Assembly (NCBI GenBank): GCA_053919585.1
Contig: CM132799.1
Source of the DNA: Euprymna scolopes
Taxonomy: Eukaryota
DNA length: 64,000 nt
Strand: one strand, 5' to 3'
Shown here: in pieces, positions 13,257 through 64,000 of the stretch
Layout of the letters: each line of letters opens with the position of its first letter
Position numbering within the stretch: position 1 is the first letter of the stretch
The notes under the pieces: model-generated
What the model was told of the DNA's origin: nothing
The model's database searches: none
The model's input: the letters and a program-made list of their open reading frames with translations, nothing else
Program-made: the position numbers and the translations under genes

Positions 13257-13323
<67 letters not shown>
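13257..13323. repeat. (TA)n microsatellite
   Basis: Directly visible. Confidence 0.95.
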
Positions 13324-13324
<1 letters not shown>

Positions 13325-19201: not shown

Positions 19202-19289
19202 TTACAACATGGTTTACTTATTGTGATATAAATTGGGTGATCACTTTTGTGTATTAATTTAATAGAAAAATGATCACCCACTTTAAAAC

Positions 19290-19500
19290 CAGTCAGTCTC
19301 AAAGCTATTCATGTCAGTATTCAGATCATTCAAGTTGTATTTGAAGGATTCCAGTTATTTTTAAGCATTCAAATCATTCTTAAGTTCATTCAATTAATCT
19401 TTACGGTCATTTAAGTCATTCTAAGTCAGTTACTTTTTATTATTTAAGTTATTTCAGCTAATTTTTCGGTCATATTAGTTTATCTTTAAGAATTTCATAT
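19290..19500. repeat. Degenerate ~9-10-bp low-complexity repeat (AGTCATTCA-like)
   Basis: Recurrent words tcattcaag, gcattcaaat, tcattcttaag, tcatttaag and tcattctaag. Confidence 0.5.
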
Positions 19501-20420: not shown

Positions 20421-20423
<3 letters not shown>

Positions 20424-20487
<64 letters not shown>

Positions 20488-20748
20488 ATATTTATGTTTA
20501 CTATAAACTTTTTACGCAAATATTACGCAATTATGAATCATGTAGAATATTTGCAATCATATAATTACACGAAAGAGTTAACTAAAGATGATGATCTCAT
20601 AGAAAAACAGAAAATTTCATAGAATATTATTTAAAATGAACGTTTAAAATAATATGCATATTAGCTAGATAGTTTTGCAGATGAATGCAATTCCACAACC
20701 CATATATAACAACATTGTATTCTCTGTTTTAATAAATATAAAAAGGGG

Positions 20749-20815
<67 letters not shown>
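20424..20815. repeat. Two (TA)n microsatellites (20424-20484, 20754-20815)
   Basis: Directly visible. Confidence 0.95.
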
Positions 20816-20817
<2 letters not shown>

Positions 20818-21246
20818 TCTGTTTGAAGGCCCGTCAATGCAGAAATGATTCACTCGATGGGAATAAATAAATAATAATAAACTATTTAAAAAGTTCAATG
20901 ATTTTTAATTAGTATTTATTTACTTTGAATGTAGATGGTATACTCCCTTAAATATTTCTGGGGTATCCCCATTTGCAAAATTTTCTTTTTTGTGGTATTT
21001 CATTTGATTAAAATCGTCCGTAAAATTTTTGGGGTTACAAACGCATATTTAATGTTTCCAAATATTACGTTAATGTATGAAGCAATTCTGTTATACTGTT
21101 ATACTGTCCAAGGAAGAGAATAAATTTATTTGTTTCTGGATGTATAAGGAAACTGTTTGATATCTCTGCTCTATTGTTAATTTCTGGTTGAAATATTTCT
21201 ATCAGAAACTATTCCTTTATTTTAAGTTTTCTTTGGTCTCTCTCTC

Positions 21247-24200
21247 AAAGGCGAGGAATATAGTAGACAAAGGTAACAGGCAAGAAATATAGTAGACAAA
21301 GTTAAAAGATGAGAAATATAGTAGACAAAGTTAAAAGATGAGAAATATAGTAGGCAAAGTTAAAAGATGAGAAATATAGTAGACAAAGTTAAAAGATGAG
21401 AAATATAGTAGACAAAGTTAAAAGATGAGAAATATAGTAGACAAAGTTAAAAGATAGGAAATATAGTAGGCAAAGTTAAAAGATGAGAAATATAGAAGAC
21501 AAAGTTAAAAGATGAGAAATATAGTAGACAAAGTTAAAAGAGGAGAAATATAGTAGACAAAGTTAAAAGATGAGAAATATAGTAGACAAAGTTAAAAGAT
21601 GAGAAATATAGTAGGCAAAGTTAAAAGATGAGAAATATAGTAGACAAAGTTAAAAGATGAGAAATATAGTAGACAAAGTTAAAAGATGAGAAATATAGTA
21701 GACAAAGTTAAAAGATGAGAAATATAGTAGACAAAGTTAAAAGATGAGAAATATAGTAGGCAAAGTTAAAAGATGAGAAATATAGAAGACAAAGTTAAAA
21801 GATGAGAAATATAGTAGACAAAGTTAAAAGATGAGAAATATAGTAGACAAAGTTAAAAGATGAGAAAAATAGAAGACAAAGTTAAAAGATGAGAAATATA
21901 GTAGGCAAAGTTAAATGATGAGAAATATAGTAGGCAAAGTAAAAAGGCAAGAAATATAGTAGACAAAAATAAAAGGCAAGAAATATAGTAGACAAAAATA
22001 AAAGGCAAGAAATATAGTGGCCAAATGTAACAGGCAAGAAATATAGTAGACAAAATTAAAAGATGAGAAATATAGTAGACAAAGTTAAAAGATGAGAAAT
22101 ATAGTAGACAAAGTTAAAAGATGAGAAATATAGAAGACAAAGTTAAAAGATGAGAAATATAGTAGGCAAAGTTAAAAGATGAGAAATATAGTAGACAAAG
22201 TTAAAAGATGAGAAATATAGTAGACAAAGTTAAAAGATGAGAAATATAGTAGGCAAAGTTAAAAGATGAGAAATATAGTAGACAAAGTTAAAAGATGAGA
22301 AATATAGTAGACAAAGTTAAAAGATGAGAAATATAGAAGACAAAGTTAAAAGATGAGAAATATAGTAGACAAAGTTAAAAGATGAGAAATATAGAAGACA
22401 AAGTTAAAAGATGAGAAATATAGTAGACAAAGTTAAAAGATGAGAAATATAGTAGGCAAAGTTAAATGATGAGAAATATAGTAGACAAAGTTAAAAGATG
22501 AGAAATATAGTAGGCAAAGTAAAAAGGCAAGAAATATAGTAGACAAAAATAAAAGGCAAGACATATAGTAGACAAAAATAAAAGGCAAGAAATATAGTAG
22601 ACAAAGGTAACAGGCAAGAAATATAGTAGACAAAGTTAAAAGATGAGAAATATAGTAGACAAAGTTAAAAGATGAGAAATATAGTAGACAAAGTTAAAAG
22701 ATGAGAAATATAGTAGGCAAAGTTAAAAGATGAGAAATATAGTAGACAAAGTTAAAAGATGAGAAATATAGTAGACAAAGTTAAAAGATGAGAAATATAG
22801 TAGACAAAGTTAAAAGATGAGAAATATAGTAGACAAAGTTAAAAGATGAGAAATATAGAAGACAAAGTTAAAAGATGAGAAATATAGTAGGCAAAGTTAA
22901 AAGATGAAAAATATAGTAGACAAAGTTAAAAGATGAGAAATATAGTAGACAAAGTTAAAAGATGAGAAATATAGTAGGCAAAGTTAAAAGATGAGAAATA
23001 TAGTAGACAAAGTTAAAAGATGAGAAATATAGTAGGCAAAGTTAAAAGATGAGAAATATGGAAGACAAAGTTAAAAGATGAGAAATATAGTAGACAAAGT
23101 TAAAAGATGAGAAATATAGAAGACAAAGTTAAAAGATGAGAAATATAGTAGACAAAGTTAAAAGATGAGAAATATAGTAGACAAAGTTAAAAGATGAGAA
23201 ATATAGTAGACAAAGTTAAAAGATGAGAAATATAGTAGGCAAAGTTAAAAGATGAGAAATATAGTAGACAAAGTTAAAAGATGAGAAATATAGTAGACAA
23301 AGTTAAAAGATGAGAAATATAGAAGACAAAGTTAAAAGATGAGAAATATAGTAGACAAAGTTAAAAGATGAGAAATATAGTAGACAAAGTTAAAAGATGA
23401 GAAATATAGTAGACAAAGTTAAAAGATGAGAAATATAGAAGACAAAGTTAAAAGATGAGAAATATAGTAGACAAAGTTAAAAGATGAGAAATATAGTAGT
23501 CAAAGTTAAAAGATGAGAAATATAGTAGGCAAAGTTAAATGATGAGAAATATAGTAGACAAAGTTAAAAGATGAGAAATATAGTAGGCAAAGTAAAAAGG
23601 CAAGAAATATAGTAGACAAAAATAAAAGGCAAGAAATATAGTAGACAAAAATAAAAGGCAAGAAATATAGTAGACAAAGGTAACAGGCAAGAAATATAGT
23701 AGACAAAGTTAAAAGATGAGAAATATAGTAGACAAAGTTAAAAGATGAGAAATATAGTAGACAAAGTTAAAAGATGAGAAATATAGAAGACAAAGTTAAA
23801 AGATGAGAAATATAGTAGGCAAAGTTAAAAGATGAGAAATATAGTAGACAAAGTTAAAAGATGAGAAATATAGAAGACAAAGTTAAAAGATGAGAAATAT
23901 AGAAGACAAAGTTAAAAGATGAGAAATATAGTAGACAAAGTTAAAAGATGAGAAATATAGAAGACAAAGTTAAAAGATGAGAAATATAGTAGACAAAGTT
24001 AAAAGATGAGAAATATAGAAGACAAAGTTAAAAGATGAGAAATATAGTAGACAAAGTTAAAAGATGAGAAATATAGAAGAAAAATTAAAAGATCAGAAAT
24101 ATAGTAGACAAAGGTAAAAGATGAGAAATATAGTAGACAAAGTTAAAAGATGAGAAATATAGAAGACAAAGTTAAAAGATGAGAAATATAGAAGACAAAG

Positions 24201-27200
24201 TTAAAAAATGAGAAATATAGTAGGCAAAGTTAAATGATGAGAAATATAGTAGGCAAAGTAAAAAGGCAAGAAATATAGTAGACAAAAATAAAAGGCAAGA
24301 AATATAGTAGACAAAAATAAAAGGCAAGAAATATAGTAGACAAAGGTAACAGGCAGGAAATATAGTAGACAAAGTTAAAAGATGAGAAATATAGTAGACA
24401 AAGTTAAAAGATGAGAAATATAGTAGACAAAGTTAAAAGATGAGAAATATAGAAGACAAAGTTAAAAGATGAGAAATATAGTAGGCAAAGTTAAAAGATG
24501 AGAAATATAGTAGACAAAGTTAAAAGATGAGAAATATAGTAGACAAAGTTAAAAGATGAGAAATATAGTAGACAAAGTTAAAAGATGAGAAATATAGTAG
24601 ACAAAGTTAAAAGATGAGAAATATAGTAGGCAAAGTTAAAAGATGAGAAATATAGTAGACAAAGTTAAAAGATGAGAAATATAGTAGGCAAAGTTAAAAG
24701 ATGAGAAATATAGTAGACAAAGTTAAAAGATGAGAAATATAGTAGACAAAGTTAAAAGATGAGAAATATAGAAGACAAAGTTAAAAGATGAGAAATATAG
24801 TAGACAAAGTTAAAAGATGAGAAATATAGTAGACAAAGTTAAAAGATGAGAAATATAGTAGACAAAGTTAAAAGATGAGAAATATAGTAGGCAAAGTTAA
24901 AAGATGAGAAATATAGTAGACAAAGTTAAAAGATGAGAAATATAGTAGACAAAGTTAAAAGATGAGAAATATAGAAGACAAAGTTAAAAGATGAGAAATA
25001 TAGTAGACAAAGTTAAAAGATGAGAAATATAGTAGACAAAGTTAAAAGATGAGAAATATAGTAGACAAAGTTAAAAGATGAGAAATATAGAAGACAAAGT
25101 TAAAAGATGAGAAATATAGTAGACAAAGTTAAAAGATGAGAAATATAGTAGTCAAAGTTAAAAGATGAGAAATATAGTAGGCAAAGTTAAATGATGAGAA
25201 ATATAGTAGACAAAGTTAAAAGATGAGAAATATAGTAGGCAAAGTAAAAAGGCAAGAAATATAGTAGACAAAAATAAAAGGCAAGAAATATAGTAGACAA
25301 AAATAAAAGGCAAGAAATATAGTAGACAAAGGTAACAGGCAAGAAATATAGTAGACAAAGTTAAAAGATGAGAAATATAGTAGACAAAGTTAAAAGATGA
25401 GAAATATAGTAGACAAAGTTAAAAGATGAGAAATATAGAAGACAAAGTTAAAAGATGAGAAATATAGTAGGCAAAGTTAAAAGATGAGAAATATAGTAGA
25501 CAAAGTTAAAAGATGAGAAATATAGAAGACAAAGTTAAAAGATGAGAAATATAGAAGACAAAGTTAAAAGATGAGAAATATAGTAGACAAAGTTAAAAGA
25601 TGAGAAATATAGAAGACAAAGTTAAAAGATGAGAAATATAGTAGACAAAGTTAAAAGATGAGAAATATAGAAGACAAAGTTAAAAGATGAGAAATATAGT
25701 AGACAAAGTTAAAAGATGAGAAATATAGAAGAAAAATTAAAAGATCAGAAATATAGTAGACAAAGGTAAAAGATGAGAAATATAGTAGACAAAGTTAAAA
25801 GATGAGAAATATAGAAGACAAAGTTAAAAGATGAGAAATATAGAAGACAAAGTTAAAAAATGAGAAATATAGTAGGCAAAGTTAAATGATGAGAAATATA
25901 GTAGGCAAAGTAAAAAGGCAAGAAATATAGTAGACAAAAATAAAAGGCAAGAAATATAGTAGACAAAAATAAAAGGCAAGAAATATAGTAGACAAAGGTA
26001 ACAGGCAGGAAATATAGTAGACAAAGTTAAAAGATGAGAAATATAGTAGACAAAGTTAAAAGATGAGAAATATAGTAGACAAAGTTAAAAGATGAGAAAT
26101 ATAGAAGACAAAGTTAAAAGATGAGAAATATAGTAGGCAAAGTTAAAAGATGAGAAATATAGTAGACAAAGTTAAAAGATGAGAAATATAGTAGACAAAG
26201 TTAAAAGATGAGAAATATAGTAGACAAAGTTAAAAGATGAGAAATATAGTAGACAAAGTTAAAAGATGAGAAATATAGTAGGCAAAGTTAAAAGATGAGA
26301 AATATAGTAGACAAAGTTAAAAGATGAGAAATATAGTAGGCAAAGTTAAAAGATGAGAAATATAGTAGACAAAGTTAAAAGATGAGAAATATAGTAGACA
26401 AAGTTAAAAGATGAGAAATATAGAAGACAAAGTTAAAAGATGAGAAATATAGTAGACAAAGTTAAAAGATGAGAAATATAGTAGACAAAGTTAAAAGATG
26501 AGAAATATAGTAGACAAAGTAAAAAGATGAGAAATATAGAAGACAAAGTTAAAAGATGAGAAATATAGTAGGCAAAGTTAAATGATGAGAAATATAGTAG
26601 GCAAAGTTAAAAGATGAGAAAAATAGTAGACAAAAATAAAAGGCAAGAAATATAGTAGACAAAAATAAAAGGCAAGAAATATAGTAGACAAAGGTAACAG
26701 GCAAGAAATATAGTAGACCAAGTTAAAAGATGAAAAATATAGTAGACAAAGTTAAAAGATGAGAAATATAGTAGACAAAGTTAAAAGATGAGAAATATAG
26801 TAGGCAAAGTTAAAAGATGAGAAATATAGCAGACAAAGTTAAAAGATGAGAAATATAGTAGACAAAGTTAAAAGATGAGAAATATAGAAGACAAAGTTAA
26901 AAGATGAGAAATATAGTAGACAAAGTTAAAAGATGAGAAATATAGAAGACAAAATTAAAAGATGAGAAATATAGTAGACAATGGTAAAAGATGAGAATTA
27001 TAGTAGACAAAGTTAAAAGATGAGAAATATAGAAGACAAAGTTAAAAGATGAGAAATATAGAAGACAAAGTAAAAAGATGAGAAATATAGTAGGCAAAGT
27101 TAAATGATGAGAAATATAGTAGGCAAAGTAAAAAGGCAAGAAATATAGTAGACAAAAATAAAAGGCAAGAAATATAGTAGACAAAAATAAAAGGCAAGAA

Positions 27201-30200
27201 ATATAGTAGACAAAAATAAAAGGCAAGAAATATAGTAGACAAAGGTAACAGGCAAGAAATATAGTAGGCAAAGTTAAAAGATGAGAAATATAGTAGACAA
27301 AGTTAAAAGATGAGAAATATAGTAGACAAAGTTAAAAGATGAGAAATATAGTAGACAAAGTTAAAAGATGAGAAATATAGTAGGCAAAGTTAAAAGATGA
27401 GAAATATAGTAGACAAAGTTAAAAGATGAGAAATATAGTAGACAATGTTAAAAGATGAGAAATATAGAAGACAAAGTTAAAAGATGAGAAATATAGTAGA
27501 CAAAGTTAAAAGATGAGAAATATAGAAGACAAAGTTAAAAGATGAGAAATATAGTAGACAAAGTTAAAAGATGAGAAATATTGTAGGCAAAGTTAAATGA
27601 TGAGAAATATAGTAGACAAAGTTAAAAGATGAGAAATATAGTAGGCAAAGTAAAAAGGCAAGAAATATAGTAGACAAAAATAAAAGGCAAGACATATAGT
27701 AGACAAAAATAAAAGGCAAGAAATATAGTAGACAAAGGTAACAGGCCAGAAATATAGTAGACAAAGTTAAAAGATGAGAAATATAGTAGACAAAGTTAAA
27801 AGATGAGAAATATAGTAGACAAAGTTAAAAGATGAGAAATATAGTAGGCAAAGTTAAAAGATGAGAAATATAGTAGACAAAGTTAAAAGATGAGAAATAT
27901 AGTAGACAAAGTTAAAAGATGAGAAATATAGACGACAAAGTTAAAAGATGAGAAATATAGTAGACAAAGTTAAAAGATGAGAAATATAGAAGACAAAGTT
28001 AAAAGATGAGAAATATAGAAGACAAAGTTAAAAGATGAGAAATATAGTAGACAAAGTTAAAAGTTGAGAAATATAGAAGACAAAGTTAAAAGATGAGAAA
28101 TATAGTAGGCAAAGTTAAAAGATGACAAATATAGTAGACAAAGTTAAAAGATGAGAAATATAGAAGACAAAGTTAAAAGATGAGAATATAGTAGGCAAAG
28201 TTAAAAGATGAGAAATATAGTAGACAAAGTTAAAAGATGAGAAATATAGTAGGCAAAGTTAAAAGATGAGAAATATAGAAGACAAAGTTAAAAGATGAGA
28301 AATATAGTAGACAAAGTTAAAAGATGAGAAATATAGAAGACAAAGTTAAAAGATGAGAAATATAGTAGACAAAGTTAAAAGATGAGAAATATAGTAGACA
28401 AAGTTAAAAGATGAGAAATATAGTAGACAAAGTTAAAAGATGAGAAATATAGTAGGCAAAGTTAAAAGATGAGAAATATAGTAGACAAAGTTAAAAGATG
28501 AGAAATATAGTAGACAAAGTTAAAAGATGAGAAATATAGTAGACAAAGTAAAAAGATGAGAAATATAGTAGACAAAGTTAAAAGATGATAAATATAGAAG
28601 ACAAAGTTAAAAGATGAGAAATATAGTAGACAAAGTTAAAAGATGAGAAATATAGTAGTCAAAGTTAAAAGATGAGAAATATAGTAGGCAAAGTTAAATG
28701 ATGAGAAATATAGTAGACAATGTTAAAAGATGAGAAATATAGTAGGCAAAGTAAAAAGGCAAGAAATATAGTAGACAAAAATAAAAGGCAAGAAATATAG
28801 TAGACAAAAATAAAAGGCAAGAAATATAGTAGACAAAGGAAACAGGCAAGAAATATAGTAGACAAAGTTAAAAGATGAGAAATATAGTAGACAAAGTTAA
28901 AAGATGAGAAATATAGTAGACAAAGTTAAAAGATGAGAAATATAGAAGACAAAGTTAAAAGATGAGAAATATAGTAGGCAAAGTTAAAAGATGAGAAATA
29001 TAGTAGACAAAGTTAAAAGATGAGAAATATAGAAGACACAGTTAAAAGATGAGAAATATAGAAGACAAAGTTAAAAGATGAGAAATATAGTAGCCAAAGT
29101 TAAAAGATGAGAAATATAGAAGACAAAGTTAAAAGATGAGAAATATAGTAGACAAAGTTAAAAGATGAGAAATATAGAAGACAAAGTTAAAAGATGAGAA
29201 ATATAGTAGACAAAGTAAAAAGATGAGAAATATAGAAGACAAAATTAAAAGATGAGAAATATAGTAGACAAAGTTAAAAGATGAGAAATATAGTAGACAA
29301 AGTTAAAAGATGAGAAATATAGAAGACAAAGTTAAAAGATGAGAAATATAGAAGTCAAAGTAAAAAGATGAGAAATATAGTAGGCAAAGTTAAATGATGA
29401 GAAATATAGTAGGCAAAGTAAAAAGGCAAGAAATATAGTAGACAAAAATAAAAGGCAAGAAATATAGTAGACAAAAATAAAAGGCAAGAAATATAGTAGA
29501 CAAAGGTAACAGGCAAGAAATATAGTAGACAAAGTTAAAAGATGAGAAATATAGTAGACAAAGTATAAAGATGAGAAATATAGTAGACAAAGTTAAAAGA
29601 TGAGAAATATAGAAGACAAAGTCAAAAGATGAGAAATATAGTAGGCAAAGTTAAAAGATGAGATATATAGTAGACAAAGTTAAAAGATGAGAAATATAGT
29701 AGACAAAGTTAAAAGATGAGAAATATAGAAGACAAAGTTAAAAGATGAGAAATATAGTAGACAAAGTTAAAAGATGAGAAATATAGTAGACAAAGTTAAA
29801 AGATGAGAAATATAGTAGACAAAGTTAAAAGATGAGAAATATAGAAGACAAAGTTAAAAGATGAGAAATATAGTAAACAAAGTTAAATGATGAGAAATAT
29901 AGTAGGCAAAGTTAAAAGATGAGAAATATAGTAGACAAAAATAAAAGGCAAGAAATATAGTAGACAAAAATAAAAGGCAAGAAATATAGTAGACAAAGGT
30001 AACAGGCAAGAAATATAGTAGACCAAGTTAAAAGATAAAAAATATAGTAGACAAAGTTAAAAGATGAGAAATATAGTAGACAAAGTTAAAAGATGAGAAA
30101 TATAGTAGGCAAAGTTAAAAGATGAGAAATATAGCAGACAAAGTTAAAAGATGAGAAATATAGTAGACAAAGTTAAAAGATGAGAAATATAGAAGACAAA

Positions 30201-33200
30201 GTTAAAAGATGAGAAATATAGTAGACAAAGTTAAAAGATGAGAAATATAGAAGACAAAATTAAAAGATGAGAAATATAGTAGACAAAGGTAAAAGATGAG
30301 AAATATAGTAGACAAAGTTAAAAGATGAGAAATATAGAAGACAAAGTAAAAAGATGAGAAATATAGAAGACAAAGTAAAAAGATGAGAAATATAGTAGGC
30401 AAAGTTAAATGATGAGAAATATAGTAGGCAAAGTAAAAAGGCAAGAAATATAGTAGACAAAAATAAAAGGCAAGAAATATAGTAGACAAAAATAAAAGGC
30501 AAGAAATATAGTAGACAAAAATAAAAGGCAAGAAATATAGTAGACAAAGGTAACAGGCAAGAAATATAGTAGGCAAAGTTAAAAGATGAGAAATATAGTA
30601 GACAAAGTTAAAAGATGAGAAATATAGTAGACAAAGTTAAAAGATGAGAAATATAGAAGACAAAGTTAAAAGATGAGAAATATAGTAGGCAAAGTTAAAA
30701 GATGAGAAATATAGTAGACAAAGTTAAAAGATGAGAAATATAGTAGACAAAGTTAAAAGATGAGAAATATAGAAGACAAAGTTAAAAGATGAGAAATATA
30801 GTAGACAAAGTCAAAAGATGAGAAATATAGTAGACAAAGTTAAAAGATGAGAAATATAGTAGACAAAGTTAAAAGATGAGAAATATAATAGACAAAGTTA
30901 AAAGATGAGAAATATAGTAGGCAAAGTTAACTGATGAGAAATATAGTAGGCAAAGTAAAAAGGCAAGAAATATAGTAGACAAAAATAAAAGGCAAGAAAT
31001 ATAGTAGACAAAAATAAAAGGCAAGAAATATAGTAGACAAAGGTAACAGGCAAGAAATATAGTAGACAAAGTTAAAAGTTGAGAAATATAGAAGACAAAG
31101 TTAAAAGATGAGAAATATAGTAGGCAAAGTTAAAAGATGACAAATATAGTAGACAAAGTTAAAAGATGAGAAATATAGAAGACAAAGTTAAAAGATGAGA
31201 ATATAGTAGGCAAAGTTAAAAGATGAGAAATATAGTAGACAAAGTTAAAAGATGAGAAATATAGTAGGCAAAGTTAAAAGATGAGAAATATAGAAGACAA
31301 AGTTAAAAGATGAGAAATATAGTAGACAAAGTTAAAAGATGAGAAATATAGAAGACAAAGTTAAAAGATGAGAAATATAGTAGACAAAGTTAAAAGATGA
31401 GAAATATAGTAGACAAAGTTAAAAGATGAGAAATATAGTAGACAAAGTTAAAAGATGAGAAATATAGTAGGCAAAGTTAAAAGATGAGAAATATAGTAGA
31501 CAAAGTTAAAAGATGAGAAATATAGTAGACAAAGTTAAAAGATGAGAAATATAGTAGACAAAGTAAAAAGATGAGAAATATAGTAGACAAAGTTAAAAGA
31601 TGATAAATATAGAAGACAAAGTTAAAAGATGAGAAATATAGTAGACAAAGTTAAAAGATGAGAAATATAGTAGTCAAAGTTAAAAGATGAGAAATATAGT
31701 AGGCAAAGTTAAATGATGAGAAATATAGTAGACAAAGTTAAAAGATGAGAAATATAGTAGGCAAAGTAAAAAGGCAAGAAATATAGTAGACAAAAATAAA
31801 AGGCAAGAAATATAGTAGACAAAAATAAAAGGCAAGAAATATAGTAGACAAAGGTAACAGGCAAGAAATATAGTAGACAAAGTTAAAAGATGAGAAATAT
31901 AGTAGACAAAGTTAAAAGATGAGAAATATAGTAGACAAAGTTAAAAGATGAGAAATATAGAAGACAAAGTTAAAAGATGAGAAATATAGTAGGCAAAGTT
32001 AAAAGATGAGAAATATAGTAGACAAAGTTAAAAGATGAGAAATATAGAAGACACAGTTAAAAGATGAGAAATATAGAAGACAAAGTTAAAAGATGAGAAA
32101 TATAGTAGCCAAAGTTAAAAGATGAGAAATATAGAAGACAAAGTTAAAAGATGAGAAATATAGTAGACAAAGTTAAAAGATGAGAAATATAGAAGACAAA
32201 GTTAAAAGATGAGAAATATAGTAGACAAAGTAAAAAGATGAGAAATATAGAAGACAAAATTAAAAGATGAGAAATATAGTAGACAAAGTTAAAAGATGAG
32301 AAATATAGTAGACAAAGTTAAAAGATGAGAAATATAGAAGACAAAGTTAAAAGATGAGAAATATAGAAGACAAAGTAAAAAGATGAGAAATATAGTAGGC
32401 AAAGTTAAAAGATGAGAAATATAGTAGGCAAAGTAAAAAGGCAAGAAATATAGTAGACAAAAATAAAAGGCAAGAAATATAGTAGACAAAAATAAAAGGC
32501 AAGAAATATAGTAGACAAAGGTAACAGGCAAGAAATATAGTAGACAAAGTTAAAAGATGAGAAATATAGTAGACAAAGTTAAAAGATGAGAAATATAGTA
32601 GACAAAGTTAAAAGATGAGAAATATAGAAGACAAAGTCAAAAGATGAGAAATATAGTAGGCAAAGTTAAAAGATGAGAAATATAGTAGACAAAGTTAAAA
32701 GATGAGAAATATAGTAGACAAAGTTAAAAGATGAGAAATATAGAAGACAAAGTTAAAAGATGAGAAATATAGTAGACAAAGTTAAAAGATGAGAAATATA
32801 GTAGACAAAGTTAAAAGATGAGAAATATAGTAGACAAAGTTAAAAGATGAGAAATATAGAAGACAAAGTTAAAAGATGAGAAATATAGAAGACAAAGTTA
32901 AAAGATGAGAAATATAGTAGACAAAGTTAAAAGATGAGAAATATAGTAGACAAAAATAAAAGGCAAGAAATATAGTAGACAAAACAAAAAGGCAAGAAAT
33001 ATAGTAGACAAAGGTAACAGGCAAGAAATATAGTAGACCAAGTTAAAAGATGAAAAATATAGTAGACAAAGTTAAAAGATGAGAAATATAGTAGACAAAG
33101 TTAAAAGATGAGAAATATAGTAGGCAAAGTTAAAAGATGAGAAATATAGCAGACAAAGTTAAAAGATGAGAAATATAGTAGACAAAGTTAAAAGATGAGA

Positions 33201-50500: not shown

Positions 50501-53500
50501 AAAAGATGAGAAATATAGTAGACAAAGTTAAAAGATGAGAAATATAGTAGACAACGTTAAAAGATGAGAAATATAGTAGACAAAGTTAAAAGATGAGAAA
50601 AATAGTAGGCAAATTTAAATGATGAGAAATATAGTAGACAAAGTTAAAAGATGAGAAATATAGTAGACAAAGTTAAAAGATGAGAAATATAGAAGACAAC
50701 GTTAAAAGATGAGAAATATAGTAGGCAAAGTTAAAAGATGAGAAATATAGAAGACAAAGTTAAATGATGAGAAATATAGTAGACAAAGTTAAAAGATGAG
50801 AAATATAGTAGGCAAAGTTAAAAGATGAGAAATATAGTAGACAAAGTTAAAGGATGAGAAATATAGAAGACAACGTTAAAAGATGAGAAATATAGTAGGC
50901 AAAGTTAAAAGATGAGAAATATAGTAGACAAAGTTAAAAGATGAGAAATATAGAAGACAAAGTTAAAAGATGAGAAATATAGTAGGCAAAGTTAAAAGAT
51001 GAGAAATATAGAAGACAAAGTTAAAAGATGAGAAATATAGTAGGCAAAGGTAAAAGATGAGAAATATAGTAGACAAAGTTAAAATATGAGAAATATAGTA
51101 GGCAAAGTTAAAAGATGAGAAATATAGTAGACAAAGTTAAAAGATGAGAAATATAGTAGACAAAGTTAAAAGATGAGAAATATAGTAGGCAAAGTTAAAA
51201 GATGAGAAATATAGAAGACAAAGTTAAAAGATGAGTAATATAGTAGGCAAAGTTAAATGATGAGAAATATAGTAGACAAAGTTAAAAGATGAGAAATATA
51301 GTAGGCAAAGTTAAAAGATGAGAAATATAGTAGACAAAGTTAAGAGATGAGAAATATAGTAGACAAAGTTAAAAGATGAGAAATATAGTAGGCAAAGTTA
51401 AAAGATTAGAAATATAGTAGACAAAGTTAAAAGATGAGAAATATAGTAGACAAAGTTAAAAGATGAGAAATATAGTAGACAAAGTTAAAAGATGAGAAAT
51501 ATAGTAGACAAAGTTAAAAGATGAGAAATATAGTAGACAAAGTTAAAAGATGAGAAATATAGTAGACAAAGTTAAAAGATGAGAAATATAGTAGACAAAG
51601 TTAAAAGATGAGAAATATAGAAGACAAAGTTAAAAGATGAGTAATATAGTAGGCAAAGTAAAAAGATGAGAAATATAGAAGACAAAGTTAAAAGATGAGA
51701 AATATAGTAGGCAAAGTTAAAAGATGAGAAATATAGTAGACAAAGTTAAAAGATGAGAAATATAGTAGGCAAAGTTAAAAGATGAGAAATATAGTAGACA
51801 AAGTTAAAAGATGAGAAATATAGTAGACAAAGTTAAAAGATGAGAAATATAGTAGACAAAGTTAAAAGATGAGAAATATAGTAGGAAAAGTTAAAAGATG
51901 AGAAATATAGTAGACAAAGTTAAAAGATGAGAAATATAGTAGACAAAGTTAAAAGATGAGAAATATAGTAGACAAAGTTAAAAGATGAGAAATATAGTAG
52001 ACAAAGTTAAAAGATGAGAAATATAGTAGACAAAGTTAAAAGATGAGAAATATAGTAGACAAAGTTAAAAGATGAGCAATATAGTAGACAAAGTTAAAAG
52101 ATGAGAAATATAGAAGACAAAGTTAAAAGATGAGAAATATAGAAGACAAAGTTAAAAGATGAGAAATATAGTAGGCAAAGTTAAAAGATGAGAAATATAG
52201 TAGACAACGTTAAAAGATGAGAAATATAGTAGACAAAGTTAAAAGATGAGAAATATAGTAGGCAAAGTTAAATGAGCAGAAATATAGTAGGCAAAGTTAA
52301 AAGATGAGAAATATAGTAGGCAAAGTTAAAAGATGAGAAATATAGTAGACAAAGTTAAAAGATGAGAAATATAGTAGACAAAGTTAAAAGATGAGAAATA
52401 TAGAAGACAAAGTTAAAAGATGAGAAATATAGTAGGCAAAGTTAAAAGATGAGAAATATAGTAGACAAAGTTAAAAGATGAGAAATATAGTAGACAAAGT
52501 TAAAAGATGAGAAATATAGTAGGCAAAGTTAAAAGATGAGAAATATAGTAGACAAAGTTAAAAGATGACAAATATAGTAGACAAAGTTAAAAGATGACAA
52601 ATATAGAAGACAAAGTTAAAAGATGACAAATATAGTAGACAAAGTTAAAAGATGAGAAATATAGAAGACAACGTTAAAAGATGAGAAATATAGTAGGCAA
52701 AGTTAAAAGATGAGAAATATAGTAGACAAAGTTAAAAGATGAGAAATATAGAAGACAAAGTTAAAAGATGAGAAATATAGTAGGCAAAGTTAAAAGATTA
52801 GAAATATAGAAGACAAAGTTAAAAGATGAGAAATATAGTAGGCAAAGTTAAAAGATGAGAAATATAGTAGACAAAGTTAAAAGATGAGAACTATAGTAGG
52901 CAAAGTTAAAAGATGAGAAATAAAGTAGACAAAGTTAAAAGATGAGAAATATAGTAGACAAAGTTAAAAGATGAGAAATATAGTAGGTGAAGTTAAAAGA
53001 TGAGAAATATAGAAGACAAAGTTAAAAGATGAGAAATATAGTAGGCAAAGTTAAATGATGAGAAATATAGTAGACAAAGTTAAAAGATGAGAAATATAGT
53101 AGGCAAAGTTAAAAGATGAGAAATATAGTAGACAAAGTTAAAAGATGAGAAATATAGTAGACAAAGTTAAAAGATGAGAAATATAGTAGGCAAAGTTAAA
53201 AGATGAGAAATATAGTAGACAAAGTTAAAAGATGAGAAATATAGTAGACAAAGTTAAAAGATGAGAAATATAGTAGACAAAGTTAAAAGATGAGAAATAT
53301 AGTAGGCAAAGTTAAAAGATGAGAAATATAGAAGACGAAGTTAAAAGATGAGAAATATAGTAGGCAAAGTTAAAAGATGAGAAATATAGTAGACAAAGTT
53401 AAAAGATGAGAAATATAGTAGACAACGTTAAAAGATGAGAAATATAGTAGACAAAGTTAAAAGATGAGAAATATAGTAGGCAAAGTTAAATGATGAGAAA

Positions 53501-56500
53501 TATAGTAGACAAAGTTAAAAGATGAGAAATATAGTAGACAAAGTTAAAAGATGAGAAATATAGAAGACAACGTTAAAAGATGAGAAATATAGTAGGCAAA
53601 GTTAAAAGATGAGAAATATAGAAGACAAAGTTAAATGATGAGAAATATAGTAGACAAAGTTAAAAGATGAGAAATATAGTAGGCAAAGTTAAAAGATGAG
53701 AAATATAGTAGACAAAGTTAAAAGATGAGAAATATAGTAGACAAAGTTAAAAGATGAGAAATATAGTAGACAAAGTTAAAAGATGAGAAATATAGTAGAC
53801 AAAGTTAAAAGATGAGAAATATAGTAGACAAAGTTAAAAGATGAGAAATATAAAAGACAAAGTTAAAAGATGAGACATATAGAAGACAAAGTTAAAAGAT
53901 GAGAAATATAGTAGGCGAAGTTAAAAGATGAGAAATATAGTAGACAAAGTTAAAAGATGAGAAATATAGTAGACAACGTTAAAAGATGAGAAATATAGTA
54001 GACAAAGTTAAAAGATGAGAAATATAGTAGGCAAAGTTAAATGATGAGAAATATAGTAGACAAAGTTAAAAGATGAGAAATATAGTAGGCAAAGTTAAAA
54101 GATGAGAAATATAGTAGACAAAGTTAAAAGATGAGAAATATAGTAGACAAAGTTAAAAGATGAGAAATATAGAAGACAAAGTTAAAAGATGAGAAATATA
54201 GTAGGCAAAGTTAAAAGATGAGAAATATAGTAGACAAAGTTAAAAGATGAGAAATATAGAAGACAACGTTAAAAGATGAGAAATATAGTAGGCAAAGTTA
54301 AAAGATGAGAAATATAGTAGACAAAGTTAAAAGATGACAAATATAGTAGACAAAGTTAAAAGATGAGAAATATAGAAGACAAAGTTAAAAGATGAGAAAT
54401 ATAGTAGACAAAGTTAAAAGATGAGAAATATAGAAGACAACGTTAAAAGATGAGAAATATAGTAGGCAAAGTTAAAAGATGAGAAATATAGTAGACAAAG
54501 TTAAAAGATGAGAAATATAGAAGACAAAGTTAAAAGATGAGAAATATAGTAGGCAAAGTTAAAAGATTAGAAATATAGAAGACAAAGTTAAAAGATGAGA
54601 AATATAGTAGGCAAAGTTAAAAGATGAGAAATATAGTAGACAAAGTTAAAAGATGAGAACTATAGTAGGCAAAGTTAAAAGATGAGAAATATAGTAGACA
54701 AAGTTAAAAGATGAGAAATATAGTAGACAAAGTTAAAAGATGAGAAATATAGTAGGCGAAGTTAAAAGATGAGAAATATAGTAGACAAAGTTAAAAGATG
54801 AGAAATATAGTAGGCAAAGTTAAATGATGAGAAATATAGTAGACAAAGTTAAAAGATGAGAAATATAGTAGGCAAAGTTAAAAGATGAGAAATATAGTAG
54901 ACAAAGTTAAAAGATGAGAAATATAGTAGACAAAGTTAAAAGATGAGAAATATAGTAGGCAAAGTTAAAAGATGAGAAATATAGTAGACAAAGTTAAAAG
55001 ATGAGAAATATAGTAGACAAAGTTAAAAGATGAGAAATATAGTAGACAAAGTTAAAAGATGAGAAATATAGTAGGCAAAGTTAAAAGATGAGAAATATAG
55101 AAGACAAAGTTAAAAGATGAGAAATATAGTAGGCAAAGTTAAATGATGAGAAATATAGTAGACAAAGTTAAAAGATGAGAAATATAGTAGACAACGTTAA
55201 AAGATGAGAAATATAGTAGACAAAGTTAAAAGATGAGAAAAATAGTAGGCAAAGTTAAATGATGAGAAATATAGTAGACAAAGTTAAAAGATGAGAAATA
55301 TAGTAGACAAAGTTAAAAGATGAGAAATATAGAAGACAACGTTAAAAGATGAGAAATATAGTAGGCAAAGTTAAAAGATGAGAAATATAGAAGACAAAGT
55401 TAAATGATGAGAAATATAGTAGACAAAGTTAAAAGATGAGAAATATAGTAGGAATAGTTAAAAGATGAGAAATATAGTAGACAAAGTTAAAAGATGAGAA
55501 ATATAGAAGACAAAGTTAAAAGATGAGAAATATAGTAGACAAAGTTAAAAGATGAGAAATATAGAAGACAACGTTAAAAGATGAGAAATATAGTAGGCAA
55601 AGTTAAAAGATGAGAAATATAGTAGACAAAGTTAAAAGATGAGAAATATAGTAGACAAAGTTAAAAGATGAGAAATATAGTAGGCAAAGTTAAATGATGA
55701 GAAATATAGTAGACAAAGTTAAAAGATGAGAAATATAGTAGGCAAAGTTAAAAGATGAGAAATATAGTAGGCAAAGTTAAAAGATGAGAAATATAGTAGG
55801 CAAAGTTAAAATATGAGAAATATAGTAGGCAAAGTTAAAAGATGAGAAATATAGTAGGCAAAGTTAAAAGATGAGAAATATAGTAGACAAAGTTAAAAGA
55901 TGAGAAATATAGTAGGCAAAGTTAAATGATGAGAAATATAGTAGGCAAAGTTAAATGATGAGAAATATAGTAGACAAAGTTAAAAGATGAGAAATATAGA
56001 AGACAAAGTTAAAAGATGAGAAATATAGTAGACAAAGTTAAAAGATGAGAAATATAGTAGACAAAGTTAAAAGATGAGAAATATAGTAGGCAAAGTTAAA
56101 AGATGAGAAATATAGTAGACAAAGTTAAAAGATGAGAAATATAGTAGACAATGTTAAAAGATGAGAAATATAGTAGGCAAAGTTAAATGATGAGAAATAT
56201 AGTAGACAAAGTTAAAAGATGAGAAATATAGTAGACAAAGTTAAAAGATGAGAAATATAGTAGACAAAGTTAAAAGATGAGAAATATAGTAGACAAAGTT
56301 AAAAGATGAGAAATATAGAAGACAAAGTTAAAAGATGAGAAATATAGTAGACAAAGTTAAAAGATGAGAAATATAGTAGACAAAGTTAAAAGATGAGAAA
56401 TATAGTAGACAAAGTTAAAAGATGAGAAATATAGTAGGCAAAGTTAAATGATGAGAAATATAGTAGACAAAGTTAAAAGATGAGAAATATAGTAGGCAAA

Positions 56501-59500
56501 GTTAAAAGATGAGAAATATAGTAGACAAAGTTAAAAGATGAGAAATATAGTAGGAAAAGTTAAATGATGAGAAATATAGTAGGCAAAGTTAAATGATGAG
56601 AAATATAGTAGACAAAGTTAAAAGATGAGAAATATAGTAGGCAAAGTTAAAAGATTAGAAATATAGTAGACAAAGTTAAAAGATGAGAAATATAGTAGAC
56701 AAAGTTAAAAGATGAGAAATATAGTAGGCAAAGTTAAATGATGAGAAATATAGTAGACAAAGTTAAAAGATGAGAAATATAGTAGGCAAAGTTAAAAGAT
56801 GAGAAATATAGTAGACAAAGTTAAAAGATGAGAAATATAGTAGACAAAGTTAAAAGATGAGAAATATAGAAGACAAAGTTAAAAGATGAGAAATATAGTA
56901 GGCAAAGTTAAAAGATGAGAAATATAGTAGACAAAGTTAAAGGATGAGAAATATAGAAGACAACGTTAAAAGATGAGAAATATAGTAGGCAAAGTTAAAA
57001 GATGAGAAATATAGTAGACAAAGTTAAAAGATGAGAAATATAGAAGACAAAGTTAAAAGATGAGAAATATAGTAGGCAAAGTTAAAAGATGAGAAATATA
57101 GAAGACAAAGTTAAAAGATGAGAAATATAGTAGGCAAAGGTAAAAGATGAGAAATATAGTAGACAAAGTTAAAATATGAGAAATATAGTAGGCAAAGTTA
57201 AAAGATGAGAAATATAGTAGACAAAGTTAAAAGATGAGAAATATAGTAGACAAAGTTAAAAGATGAGAAATATAGTAGGCAAAGTTAAAAGATGAGAAAT
57301 ATAGAAGACAAAGTTAAAAGATGAGAAATATAGTAGGCAAAGTTAAATGATGAGAAATATAGTAGACAAAGTTAAAAGATGAGAAATATAGTAGGCAAAG
57401 TTAAAAGATGAGAAATATAGTAGACAAAGTTAAAAGATGAGAAATATAGTAGACAAAGTTAAAAGATGAGAAATATAGTAGGCAAAGTTAAAAGATTAGA
57501 AATATAGTAGACAAAGTTAAAAGATGAGAAATATAGTAGACAAAGTTAAAAGATGAGAAATATAGTAGACAAAGTTAAAAGATGAGAAATATAGTAGACA
57601 AAGTTAAAAGATGAGAAATATAGTAGACAAAGTTAAAAGATGAGAAATATAGTAGACAAAGTTAAAAGATGAGAAATATAGTGGACAAAGTTAAAAGATG
57701 AGAAATATAGAAGACAAAGTTAAAAGATGAGTAATATAGTAGGCAAAGTAAAAAGATGAGAAATATAGAAGACAAAGTTAAAAGATGAGAAATATAGTAG
57801 GCAAAGTTAAAAGATGAGAAATATAGTAGACAAAGTTAAAAGATGAGAAATATAGTAGGCAAAGTTAAAAGATGAGAAATATAGTAGACAAAGTTAAAAG
57901 ATGAGAAATATAGTAGACAAAGTTAAAAGATGAGAAATATAGTAGACAAAGTTAAAAGATGAGAAATATAGTAGGAAAAGTTAAAAGAGGAGAAATATAG
58001 TAGACAAAGTTAAAAGATGAGAAATATAGTAGACAAAGTTAAAAGATGAGAAATATAGTAGACAAAGTTAAAAGATGAGAAATATAGTAGACAAAGTTAA
58101 AAGATGAGAAATATAGTAGACAAAGTTAAAAGATGAGAAATATAGTAGACAAAGTTAAAAGATGAGCAATATAGTAGACAAAGTTAAAAGATGAGAAATA
58201 TAGTAGACAAAGTTAAAAGATGAGAAATATAGAAGACAAAGTTAAAAGATGAGAAATATAGTAGGCAAAGTTAAAAGATGAGAAATATAGTAGACAAAGT
58301 TAAAAGATGAGAAATATAGTAGACAACGTTAAAAGATGAGAAATATAGTCACAAAGTTAAAAGATGAGAAATATAGTAGGCAAAGTTAAATGATGAGAAA
58401 TATAGTAGACAAAGTTAAAAGATGAGAAATATAGTAGGCAAAGTTAAAAGATGAGAAATATAGTAGACAAAGTTAAAAGATGAGAAATATAGTAGACAAA
58501 GTTAAAAGATGAGAAATATAGAAGACAAAGTTAAAAGATGAGAAATATAGTAGGCAAAATTAAAAGATGAGAAATATAGTAGACAAAGTTAAAAGATGAG
58601 AAATATAGAAGACAACGTTAAAAGATGAGAAATATAGTAGGCAAAGTTAAAAGATGAGAAATATAGTAGACAAAGTTAAAAGATGACAAATATAGTAGAC
58701 AAAGTTAAAAGATGAGAAATATAGAAGACAAAGTTAAAAGATGAGAAATATAGTAGACAAAGTTAAAAGATGAGAAATATAGAAGACAACGTTAAAAGAT
58801 GAGAAATATAGTAAGCAAAGTTAAAAGATGAGAAATATAGTAGACAAAGTTAAAAGATGAGAAATATAGAAGACAAAGTTAAAAGATGAGAAATATAGTA
58901 GGCAAAGTTAAAAGATTAGAAATATAGAAGACAAAGTTAAAAGATGAGAAATATAGTAGGCAAAGTTAAAAGATGAGAAATATAGTAGACAAAGTTAAAA
59001 GATGAGAACTATAGTAGGCAAAGTTAAAAGATGAGAAATATAGTAGACAAAGTTAAAAGATGAGAAATATAGTAGACAAAGTTAAAAGATGAGAAATATA
59101 GTAGGCGAAGTTAAAAGATGAGAAATATAGAAGACAATGTTAAAAGATGAGAAATATAGTAGGCAAAGTAAAATCATGAGAAATATAGTAGACAAAGTTA
59201 AAAGATGAGAAATATAGTAGGCAAAGTTAAAAGATGAGAAATATAGTAGACAAAGTTAAAAGATGAGAAATATAGTAGACAAAGTTAAAAGATGAGAAAT
59301 ATAGTAGGCAAAGTTAAAAGATGAGAAATATAGTAGACAAAGTTAAAAGATGAGAAATATAGTAGACAAAGTTAAAAGATGAGAAATATAGTAGACAAAG
59401 TTAAAAGATGAGAAATATAGTAGGCAAAGTTAAAAGATGAGAAATATAGAAGACAAAGTTAAAAGATGAGAAATATAGTAGGCAAAGTTAAAAGATGAGA

Positions 59501-62500: not shown

Positions 62501-64000
62501 AAGTTAAAAGATGAGAAATATAGTAGGCAAAGTTAAATGATGAGAAATATAGTAGACAAAGTTAAAAGATGAGAAATATAGTAGGCAAAGTTAAAAGATG
62601 AGAAATATAGTAGACAAAGTTAAAAGATGAGAAATATAGTAGACAAAGTTAAAAGATGAGAAATATAGAAGACAAAGTTAAAAGATGAGAAATATAGTGG
62701 GCAAAATTAAAAGATGAGAAATATAGTAGACAAAGTTAAAAGATGAGAAATATAGAAGACAACGTTAAAAGATGAGAAATATAGTAGGCAAAGTTAAAAG
62801 ATGAGAAATATAGTAGACAAAGTTAAAAGATGACAAATATAGTAGACAAAGTTAAAAGATGAGAAATATAGAAGACAAAGTTAAAAGATGAGAAATATAG
62901 TAGACAAAGTTAAAAGATGAGAAATATAGAAGACAACGTTAAAAGATGAGAAATATAGTAGGCAAAGTTAAAAGATGAGAAATATAGTAGACAAAGTTAA
63001 AAGATGACAAATATAGTAGACAAAGTTAAAAGATGAGAAATATAGAAGACAAAGTTAAAAGATGAGAAATATAGTAGACAAAGTTAAAAGATGAGAAATA
63101 TAGAAGACAACGTTAAAAGATGAGAAATATAGTAGGCAAAGTTAAAAGATGAGAAATATAGTAGACAAAGTTAAAAGATGACAAATATAGTAGACAAAGT
63201 TAAAAGATGAGAAATATTGAAGACAAAGTTAAAAGATGAGAAATATAGTAGACAAAGTTAAAAGATGAGAAATATAGAAGACAAAGTTAAAAGATGAGAA
63301 ATATAGTAGGCAAAGTTAAAAGATTAGAAATATAGAAGACAAAGTTAAAAGATGAGAAATATAGTAGGCAAAGTTAAAAGATGAGAAATATAGTAGACAA
63401 AGTTAAAAGATGAGAACTATAGTAGGCAAAGTTAAAAGATGAGAAATATAGTAGACAAAGTTAAAAGATGAGAAATATAGTAGAAAAAGTTAAAAGATGA
63501 GAAATATAGTAGGCGAAGTTAAAAGATGAGAAATATAGAAGACAAAGTTAAAAGATGAGAAATATAGTAGGCAAAGTTAAATGATGAGAAATATAGTAGA
63601 CAAAGTTAAAAGATGAGAAATATAGTAGGCAAAGTTAAAAGATAAGAAATATAGTAGACAAAGTTAAAAGATGAGAAATATAGTAGACAAAGTTAAAAGA
63701 TGAGAAATATAGTAGGCAAAGTTAAAAGATGAGAAATATAGTAGACAAAGTTAAAAGATGAGAAATATAGTAGACAAAGTTAAAAGATGAGAAATATAGT
63801 AGACAAAGTTAAAAGATGAGAAATATAGTAGACAAAGTTAAAAGATGAGAAATATAGTAGACAAAGTTAAAAGATGAGAAATATAGTAGACAAAGTTAAA
63901 AGATGAGAAATATAGTAGACAAAGTTAAAAGATGAGAAATATAGTAGACAAAGTTAAAAGATGAGAAATATAGTAGACAAAGTTAAAAGATGAGCAATAT
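21247..64000. repeat. 29-bp satellite DNA array, consensus AGAAATATAGTAGACAAAGTTAAAAGATG, ~1,470 monomers, open-ended at the window edge
   Basis: A continuous head-to-tail 29-bp period with no inversion or insertion seen. The consensus is 16 A, 6 G, 6 T, 1 C (24% GC, 76% purine on the + strand). Only rare 1-bp deletions occur (e.g. ~24080, ~28187, ~39977, ~58350). Confidence 0.99.

What the first reader, a model, noticed from the sequence alone, without database searches (positions are those of the whole stretch)
23100..64000. Nested multi-kb duplications whose period changes along the array, recording its expansion history
Private variants recur at offsets that are multiples of 29 (minus known 1-bp deletions). 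The offset is 1652 bp (57 monomers -1; gatcagaa at 24091/25743), 3015 bp (104 monomers -1; deletion monomer tgagaatata at 28181/31196), 1537 bp (53 monomers; ORF-track copies 33883/35420) and 5161 bp (178 monomers -1; gagtaatatagtagaataag at 35052/40213). The marker gagcaatat occurs at 37952, 43113, 47724, 52074, 58164 and 63992 (steps 5161, 4611, 4350, 6090, 5828). There is therefore no single HOR: duplication units are ~1.5-3 kb near the edge and ~4-6 kb inward, and copies gain or lose whole monomers. This fits unequal exchange, break-induced replication or rolling-circle reinsertion (inference).
Basis: seen in the sequence. Interest (0 to 1): 0.7.

Follow-up and report, generated by a model that had tools for sequence, protein, structure and literature searches.

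The report
Single-locus 29-bp satellite with nested duplications
A 64-kb run of a 29-base repeat, found at only one place in a 5.9-Gb animal genome, grew by repeatedly copying and trimming kilobase-sized blocks of whole repeat units; the pattern is real and clear but is the ordinary behaviour of tandem DNA.

Summary
The duplicated blocks are far beyond chance: monomer shuffles give exact runs of at most 12 monomers, while the array has 16 diagonals with runs of 20 or more and one of 123.

The array runs from window 21253 to 21,150 bp past the window end. It holds 2202 monomers of 141 types, with only eight 1-bp deletions. It contains all 860 exact consensus 29-mers of the 5.9-Gb genome, so it is a single-locus satellite.

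No single higher-order period exists. No offset explains more than 25% of rare-monomer matches. Blocks of 36 to 210 monomers (1.0-6.1 kb) were duplicated in tandem, in register, at 99.1-100% identity. Copies then differ mainly by whole-monomer block indels.

The period does not simply grow inward. The unseen right part has 3.4-kb and 2.3-2.5-kb duplications. An old monomer type sits on both edges around a homogenised centre. That is layered expansion by homology-directed, periodicity-preserving duplication, which is a known process.

No long reads were available, so over-expansion of the two near-perfect pairs is untested. The scan has already reported the same kind of nested structure on other single-locus arrays of this genome.

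The parts
21253..64000 (+). 29-bp satellite array with consensus GAGAAATATAGTAGACAAAGTTAAAAGAT. It continues to G000:C17:45965150, which is 21,150 bp past the window. In all it has 2202 monomers and about 63.9 kb, all in one orientation.
   Evidence: TRF gives period 29, 1474 copies in the window and 94% matches. Extension and right end. Monomer parse: 2194 monomers of 29 bp and 8 of 28 bp, 141 types. All 860 exact consensus 29-mers of the genome lie here, none on the reverse strand.
20830..21244 (+). Copy of a dispersed repeat that abuts the left edge of the array.
   Evidence: Copies at 70-85% identity lie on many contigs, most ending at query position 415, which is window 21244. Two copies inspected (L022, L023) run on with shared, non-satellite sequence; none of the three inspected carries the 29-mer. 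The right flank is unique in the genome.
21253..36620 (+). Older left domain, monomers 0 to about 530. It is marked by recurring clusters of GGCAAG-type monomers every 17-57 monomers and diverges more from the consensus.
   Evidence: Monomer map. Mean distance to consensus is 1.25-1.8 nt per monomer against 0.73-0.9 in the centre. GGCAAG-type monomers occur only at indices 0-530, at 669-699 (a duplicated copy) and at 2140-2201 on the right edge.
22911..26504 (+). Tandem duplication of 57 monomers (1652 bp). Copy 1 is 22911-24852 and copy 2 is 24563-26504. They differ by 2 nt over 67 monomers, with an exact run of 61 monomers.
28042..34070 (+). Tandem duplication of 104 monomers (3015 bp). The copies are 28042-31056 and 31057-34070, at 99.14% identity (26 nt differences). 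This is the oldest of the clean pairs. A 114-monomer relation (26650-27345 and 29955-30650) overlaps it.
33839..36332 (+). 53-monomer (1537 bp) duplicate, 33839-34795 and 35376-36332. Its second copy was later carried along by the 178-monomer duplication, giving a third copy at offset 231 monomers.
34912..45408 (+). 178-monomer (5161 bp) duplication, 34912-39029 and 40073-44190, at 99.73% identity. It continues on offsets of 183 and 182 monomers after whole-monomer indels.
41842..58197 (+). Series of further copies of the same large unit at steps of 159, 150, 160 and 210 monomers (4611, 4350, 4640, 6090 bp). Pairs are 41842-44712 with 46453-49323, 44945-49323 with 49295-53673, 49295-50802 with 53935-55442, and 50803-52107 with 56893-58197. 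Identity is 99.6-99.8%.

Best explanation
This is a non-coding, single-locus satellite: a 29-bp unit, 2202 copies, about 64 kb, in a large animal genome. It grew from within. Repeated in-register misalignment between monomers during homology-directed repair or exchange duplicated blocks of 36-210 whole monomers in tandem; the process could be unequal sister-chromatid exchange, or replication-coupled template switching or break-induced replication. The same process later added or removed blocks of 1-50 monomers inside the copies. Point mutation, and probably short gene conversion, then diversified them. Each event picks its own endpoints, so the local period differs from place to place and no fixed higher-order repeat forms. 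Newer variants expanded in the middle and left the oldest monomer type on both edges. Shown here: the structure, its significance, the single-locus status, the in-register offsets and the edge-versus-centre asymmetry. Inferred: the molecular pathway and the order of events.
For: Offsets are whole numbers of monomers. Block length is about equal to the offset for the cleanest events (57/67, 104/104, 116/123, 150/151 monomers), as expected for single tandem duplications. All copies are direct, with no reverse-strand monomer. Successive large units differ mainly by whole-monomer block indels. The structure is far beyond the shuffle nulls. GGCAAG-type monomers sit only on the two edges, and the centre is more homogeneous. 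About one third of the differences between copies (19 of 57) swap between common monomer types and two thirds create rare types. Independent runs hold the satellite at high multiplicity: a perfect-match consensus unitig has k-mer depth 300 in a run of about 0.76x coverage of the same species, against about 770 assembly copies of those words. That is the same order of magnitude, so there is no gross over-expansion. Arabidopsis mutation-accumulation lines directly showed kb-scale tandem duplications and deletions that add or remove only whole satellite units. Simulations with that spectrum reproduce homogenised blocks (10.1101/2025.06.02.657473).
Against: No long read spans any duplication, so the two near-perfect pairs rest on the assembly alone: 1652 bp in the window and 3364 bp beyond it. 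The copy-number check from unitig depth is rough, about 550 against 770, with assumed read length and coverage. Sequence alone cannot separate unequal exchange from replication-based duplication. The six-copy series of 150-210-monomer units could also be a short burst of another kind.
Confidence: 0.8

Rival explanations
1. Assembly over-expansion. Some of the near-identical pairs are artefacts of assembling a highly repetitive array, and the real locus has one copy. The main candidates are the 1652-bp pair with 2 differences and the 3364-bp pair with none.
For: Identity is 100% over 1.8 kb and 3.6 kb. No long-read run was offered. The read tool cannot lay reads inside the array. The unitig-depth estimate is somewhat lower than the assembly count, about 550 against 770.
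Against: Most duplicated pairs carry 3-26 private differences, so they cannot be one sequence assembled twice. The duplicated units (1.6-3.4 kb) are shorter than typical long reads (own knowledge). [quoted passage not shown] The depth estimate is within a factor of 1.5 and comes from another individual.
Confidence: 0.1
2. Rolling-circle amplification of an excised circle (eccDNA) and reinsertion created the multi-copy series of 4-6-kb units.
For: The same large unit occurs six times in a row, with markers at steps of 178, 159, 150, 210 and 201 monomers. The first four copies are all within about 0.2-0.5% of each other.
Against: The copies have unequal lengths and different internal block indels. 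Most other events are strictly two-copy with block length about equal to offset. No shared sharp junction was found.
Confidence: 0.05
3. The higher-order pattern is kept by selection because the array has a function such as a centromere, a regulatory element or a small-RNA source.
For: The phase is very strict, with eight 1-bp deletions in 2202 monomers. The monomer family is present in runs of a second species label. The plus strand is strongly purine-rich, with GC skew about 0.69 and AT skew about 0.45.
Against: The array is single-locus and only 64 kb on a 129-Mb contig. The consensus has stop codons in all six frames (read directly from it). No period is conserved. Strict phase is what homology-directed indels produce without selection. 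Expression and chromatin were not testable here.
Confidence: 0.04

Closest known systems
Arabidopsis CEN178 centromeric arrays: periodicity-preserving kb-scale tandem duplications and deletions seen in mutation-accumulation lines (10.1101/2025.06.02.657473)
   Same: Indels add or remove only whole repeat units. Inserted sequence is identical to adjacent units or a mosaic of them. Event sizes in bp are similar (mean insertion 1.9 kb, up to 31 units, about 5.5 kb). Homogenised blocks emerge from many such events.
   Different: Here the unit is 29 bp, not 178 bp. The array is 64 kb at one locus, not megabases at every centromere. Events span 36-210 units. No pedigree or mutant evidence exists for this genome.
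Layered expansion of human alpha-satellite arrays, where young homogeneous cores are flanked on both sides by older diverged layers (own knowledge; named as a model)
   Same: The older monomer type lies on both edges, and a younger, more homogeneous domain lies in the middle.
   Different: There is no fixed n-mer HOR, no evidence of centromere function, and the scale is about 1000 times smaller.
Other single-locus satellites with nested higher-order structure reported by this scan in the same genome (s1-272079 13-bp, s1-244913 51-bp, s1-288492, s1-247365)
   Same: Tens-of-kb arrays of a short unit at a single locus, built from kilobase blocks copied and trimmed (those notes were not re-tested here).
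   Different: The monomer is different and unrelated. Here no transposon origin could be shown: the array abuts a dispersed repeat, but other copies of that repeat lack the 29-mer.
Classical minisatellites (10-60-bp units)
   Same: Unit length, internal variant-repeat maps, and in-register gain and loss of units.
   Different: At about 64 kb and 2200 units it is several-fold larger than typical minisatellites (own knowledge). Polymorphism was not measured.

Membership tests
Satellite DNA / tandem repeat array | Head-to-tail copies of one monomer in one orientation over a long stretch | tested here: met
   Period 29, 2202 monomers, 94% matches, no reverse-strand copy.
Classical higher-order repeat (fixed n-mer HOR, as in human alpha satellite) | One multimeric unit of fixed length, repeated many times, dominating the array | tested here: not met
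   The best offset explains only 17-25% of rare-monomer matches in any domain. Observed offsets include 36, 53, 57, 81, 88, 104, 116, 150, 159, 160, 178 and 210 monomers.
Layered-expansion satellite array | A central domain more homogeneous than the edges, with the same old variant type on both flanks | tested here: met
   Distance to consensus is 0.82 nt per monomer in the centre, against 1.1-1.8 on the left and 1.4-2.0 in the last 70 monomers. GGCAAG-type monomers occur only at indices 0-530, 669-699 and 2140-2201.
Periodicity-preserving tandem duplication/deletion by homology-directed repair | Offsets and indels are whole numbers of monomers, and duplicated sequence is adjacent and direct | tested here: met
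   All offsets are n x 29 bp minus the intervening 28-bp monomers. Block length is about equal to offset for the clean events. Block indels are 1-50 monomers.
Periodicity-preserving tandem duplication/deletion by homology-directed repair | Dependence on recombination or repair factors, or direct observation of new events | not testable with these tools
   This needs pedigrees, mutation-accumulation lines or mutants.
Centromeric satellite | The same family forms large arrays on many or all chromosomes, or binds centromeric histone | tested here: not met
   All 860 exact consensus copies lie in this one 64-kb array. The other genome hits are unrelated 13-, 14/26- and 25-bp repeats at 65-72% identity. 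Histone binding is not testable here.
Rolling-circle / eccDNA-derived amplification | Three or more equal-length copies with identical junctions | tested here: not met
   The multi-copy series has units of 178, 159, 150, 210 and 201 monomers with different internal indels. Other events are two-copy.
Transposon-borne tandem repeat expanded into a satellite | The monomer is present as a short array inside other copies of a mobile element | tested here: not met
   The left flank is a dispersed repeat, but the copies inspected lack the 29-mer and two of the three inspected (L022, L023) continue with different sequence that the two share. The right flank is unique.

The most novel reading that the evidence does not exclude
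This genome may be unusually prone to making locus-specific 'mega-minisatellites': tens of kb of a private short unit, each with layered, nested kb-scale duplications. This array and several others noted by the scan would then reflect a lineage-specific replication or repair bias rather than generic satellite turnover. Arrays like this one could then serve as natural recorders for measuring that process, for example by comparing the same locus between the two species labels that both carry the monomer.
Probability: 0.1. Interest if true: 0.45.

Novelty: new member of a known kind. Interest (0 to 1): 0.2.

Why it matters
The finding gives a clean, fully phased example of how a short-unit satellite outside any evident centromere grows by whole-unit block duplication and trimming. 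The phase is strict (only eight 1-bp deletions in 2202 units), and old units are left on both edges. It adds no new mechanism. Its value is as a well-resolved locus for comparing individuals or sister species, and as a caution that 'higher-order repeat' callers expecting one period will mis-describe such arrays.

Tried and rejected
As the tool itself suggested, I laid the left junction plus 11 monomers.
   - Only short collapsed unitigs (40-67 nt) were laid on the array, none crossing the flank-array junction, so the call tests abundance and not arrangement.
   - The two raw-read runs gave 8 and 0 reads. In X4 a palindromic loose end that looks like a library linker (in 3 reads) points to a special library; X5 gave no reads at all. 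They are uninformative.
3. Relatives of the monomer elsewhere in the genome. BLAST-type hits at 65-72% identity turned out to be unrelated AT-rich 13-, 14/26- and 25-bp repeats.
4. Transposon origin. The dispersed repeat on the left flank does not carry the monomer in its other copies, and the right flank does not continue it.
5. Coding potential. The consensus has stops in all six frames. There is no ORF of 100 aa or more in the 10-kb locus that holds the right flank.
6. Taxon from the LINE reverse transcriptase. Only 'Eukaryota, animal phyla' came back. The cephalopod label comes from earlier notes and was not tested.
7. Literature search for the monomer sequence found no paper.
8. Greedy reversal of clean tandem duplications recovers only 4-9 events, covering 16-37% of the array. 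A full history cannot be read off.
9. The N stretches at 6255-6393 and 13627-13839 were left untouched.
Full report
**What is there**

TRF finds one 29-bp tandem repeat from window 21253 to the window end, with 1474 copies and 94% matches. Its plus strand is strongly purine-rich, with GC skew about 0.69 and AT skew about 0.45. The window is G000:C17:45880001-45944000 of a 5.9-Gb, 925-contig genome.

I fetched the next 100 kb. The array ends 21,150 bp beyond the window, at extended coordinate about 85150. Anchoring on ATATAG splits it into 2202 monomers: 2194 of 29 bp and eight of 28 bp, with no other length, in 141 sequence types.

A whole-genome pattern search finds 860 exact consensus 29-mers, all on the plus strand. 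All 860 lie inside this array: 576 in the window and the rest in the extension. BLAST-type hits elsewhere in the genome, at 65-72% identity, are unrelated AT-rich repeats of 13, 14/26 and 25 bp. The array is therefore a single-locus satellite of about 64 kb.

**Checking the observation**

The steps equal 57, 104, 53, 178, 159, 150, 210 and 201 monomers, less 1 bp where one of the eight 28-bp monomers lies between the copies.

- A scan of every shift with 580-bp windows shows best matches of 99.5-100% at those same offsets.
- Diagonal segments of 1-3.6 kb have at most 12 mismatches.
- At the monomer level, the longest exact runs between shifted copies are 123, 61 and 40 monomers, and 16 diagonals have runs of 20 or more.
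- Shuffling monomer order, either globally or within 100- or 30-monomer blocks, gives longest runs of only 9-12 and no diagonal of 20 or more.

**Anatomy**

The monomer map and segment table give these main events in the window.

| Offset (monomers) | Offset (bp) | Copy 1 | Copy 2 | Identity or differences |
|---|---|---|---|---|
| 57 | 1652 | 22911-24852 | 24563-26504 | 2 nt differences |
| 104 | 3015 | 28042-31056 | 31057-34070 | 99.14% |
| 53 | 1537 | 33839-34795 | 35376-36332 | 99.69% (3 nt) |
| 178 | 5161 | 34912-39029 | 40073-44190 | 99.73% |
| 159 | 4611 | 41842-44712 | 46453-49323 | 99.6-99.8% |
| 150 | 4350 | 44945-49323 | 49295-53673 | 99.6-99.8% |
| 160 | 4640 | 49295-50802 | 53935-55442 | 99.6-99.8% |
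| 210 | 6090 | 50803-52107 | 56893-58197 | 99.6-99.8% |

The 178-monomer pair continues on offsets of 183 and 182 monomers after small whole-monomer indels. Beyond the window there is a perfect 116-monomer (3364 bp) pair with no difference over 3567 bp, plus pairs at 36, 81 and 88 monomers.

For the cleanest events, block length is about equal to the offset: 67 for 57, 104 for 104, 123 for 116 and 151 for 150. That is the signature of single tandem duplications.

Gapped monomer-level alignment of six successive large units (starts at monomers 560, 738, 897, 1047, 1257, 1458) shows 120-139 identical monomers per pair. The differences are dominated by block indels of 1-50 whole monomers.

Inside the centre, an irregular 45-61-monomer sub-unit recurs 19-26 times. 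The 4-6-kb units are themselves composites of it.

No offset accounts for more than 25% (left), 17% (centre) or 19% (right) of rare-monomer matches. There is truly no single higher-order period.

**Edges and centre**

A distinctive cluster of GGCAAG-type monomers, 107 in all, occurs only at three places:

- monomers 0-530;
- monomers 669-699, which is a copy carried by the 178-monomer duplication;
- monomers 2140-2201 at the right edge.

It is absent from about 1440 monomers in between. Mean distance to the consensus is 1.1-1.8 nt per monomer on the left and 1.4-2.0 in the last 70 monomers, but 0.82 in the centre. The first and last monomers share a GGCGAGG variant. An old array type was therefore split by a younger, homogenised expansion in its interior.

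**Limits of the 'history' reading**

Greedily undoing clean, ungapped tandem duplications gives the following.

| Minimum monomer identity | Events found | Monomers remaining (from 2202) |
|---|---|---|
| 90% | 4 | 1843 |
| 80% | 6 | 1690 |
| 70% | 9 | 1390 |

Roughly a third of the array is explained by a handful of recent events. The remainder is older and scrambled by indels.

Of 57 monomer differences between duplicate copies, 19 swap between common types, which fits gene conversion or recurrent change. The other 38 create rare types, which fits point mutation.

**Surroundings**

- The 415 bp left of the array are a copy of a dispersed repeat, with 70-85% identical copies on many contigs, most ending at window 21244.
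- Two inspected copies of that repeat (L022, L023) continue with a shared sequence that is not the satellite. None of the three inspected carries the 29-mer. The right flank is unique and does not continue the element.
- The origin of the monomer is therefore unknown.
- The consensus has stop codons in all six frames (read directly). There is no ORF of 100 aa or more in the 10-kb locus that holds the right flank.
- The left 21 kb holds a decayed non-LTR retrotransposon with a reverse transcriptase, RVT_1 at E 1.7e-28. It also holds a marginal U2 snRNA-like match and many (TA)n runs.

**Read evidence**

- Only short-read runs and Logan contigs were offered, with no long reads.
Following the tool's own advice, I laid the left junction plus 11 monomers.
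- The result is limited to short collapsed unitigs.
- In an independent 2019 run of the same species label (4.5 Gb, about 0.76x), a perfect-match consensus unitig has k-mer depth 300. Those 31-mers occur about 770 times in the assembly. At an assumed k-mer coverage of about 0.55x, this implies roughly 550 copies.
- That is the same order of magnitude, so the array is not grossly over-expanded, but individual duplications remain untested.
- A run of a second species label also holds the monomers at high depth, 143 in a 0.9-Gb run.
- The two raw-read runs gave 8 and 0 reads. In X4 a palindromic loose end that looks like a library linker (in 3 reads) points to a special library; X5 gave nothing to judge. 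They are uninformative.

**Mechanism**

Four features fit homology-directed, periodicity-preserving duplication and deletion:

- direct, in-register, adjacent duplications of variable size;
- block length about equal to the offset;
- later whole-monomer indels;
- near-absence of out-of-phase indels.

This process was observed directly in Arabidopsis mutation-accumulation lines. All 56 large centromeric indels added or removed only complete units. Insertions were tandem or mosaic copies of adjacent units, averaging 1.9 kb. Simulations with that spectrum regenerated homogenised blocks (10.1101/2025.06.02.657473).

Break-induced replication has experimental support for human arrays (10.1101/2023.11.11.566714). 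Sequence alone cannot separate unequal sister-chromatid exchange from replication-based routes.

Rolling-circle reinsertion is disfavoured by the unequal unit lengths and the mostly two-copy events. Assembly artefact is excluded for the pairs that carry private differences. It stays possible, at about 10%, for the two near-perfect pairs.

**Comparison and novelty**

The pattern matches what is known for satellites: layered expansion, nested duplications and variable local periods. It differs only in scale and setting, with a 29-bp unit, one locus and no sign of a centromere.

The monomer sequence was not found in the searchable literature. Earlier notes of this scan describe the same kind of structure in other single-locus arrays of this genome and judged them ordinary. 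I did not re-test those, and I did not test their 'cephalopod' label; my own evidence reaches only 'animal'.

Verdict: a correct and careful observation of an ordinary process, a new member of a known kind, and of low interest.

Noticed in passing
G000:C17:45949274-45956204 (extended coordinates 69274-76204, in L011-L012): A perfect 116-monomer (3364 bp) tandem duplication lies just outside the window, with no difference over 3567 bp. It is the youngest event in the array, or the best candidate for an assembly artefact.
   Followed up: partly
window 17798-19282: Tandem repeats of about 201 and 244 bp (80-82% matches) are followed directly by a marginal U2 snRNA match at 19155-19282 (48.5 bits against a gathering score of 46). 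This may be a U2-derived SINE-like repeat, as earlier notes of the scan suggest for this genome.
   Followed up: no
window 6995-9888: A decayed non-LTR retrotransposon. It has a 414-aa ORF with a reverse-transcriptase domain (RVT_1, E 1.7e-28) and short upstream ORF fragments.
   Followed up: partly
L005 (G000:C22:32746588-32747644): A 1-kb array of a 25-bp unit, ACAAAGTTAAGATTGAGTACAAAAG. It shares ACAAAGTTAA and a GAT(T)GAG motif with the 29-mer, so it may be a distant relative or a chance match in AT-rich repeats.
   Followed up: no
G000:C12:54460000-54517400: A region of at least 57 kb gives dozens of 66%-identity hits to the 29-bp array. It is probably another large AT-rich, purine-skewed tandem array.
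   Followed up: no
window 21270-21570 in runs X1 and X2: The 29-bp monomers are present at high k-mer depth in a run filed under a second organism label. The satellite family is therefore shared by at least two species labels.
   Followed up: partly
window 3437-20815: The 21-kb left flank holds about ten (TA)n or (AT)n microsatellites of 19-44 units. Two N stretches (6255-6393, 13627-13839) were left untouched.
   Followed up: no
run X4, loose ends at window 21278: Reads carry a palindromic sequence, GGTTCGTCCATCGATCGATGGACGAACC. It looks like a library linker, so these 'GENOMIC OTHER' runs are not plain shotgun data.
   Followed up: no
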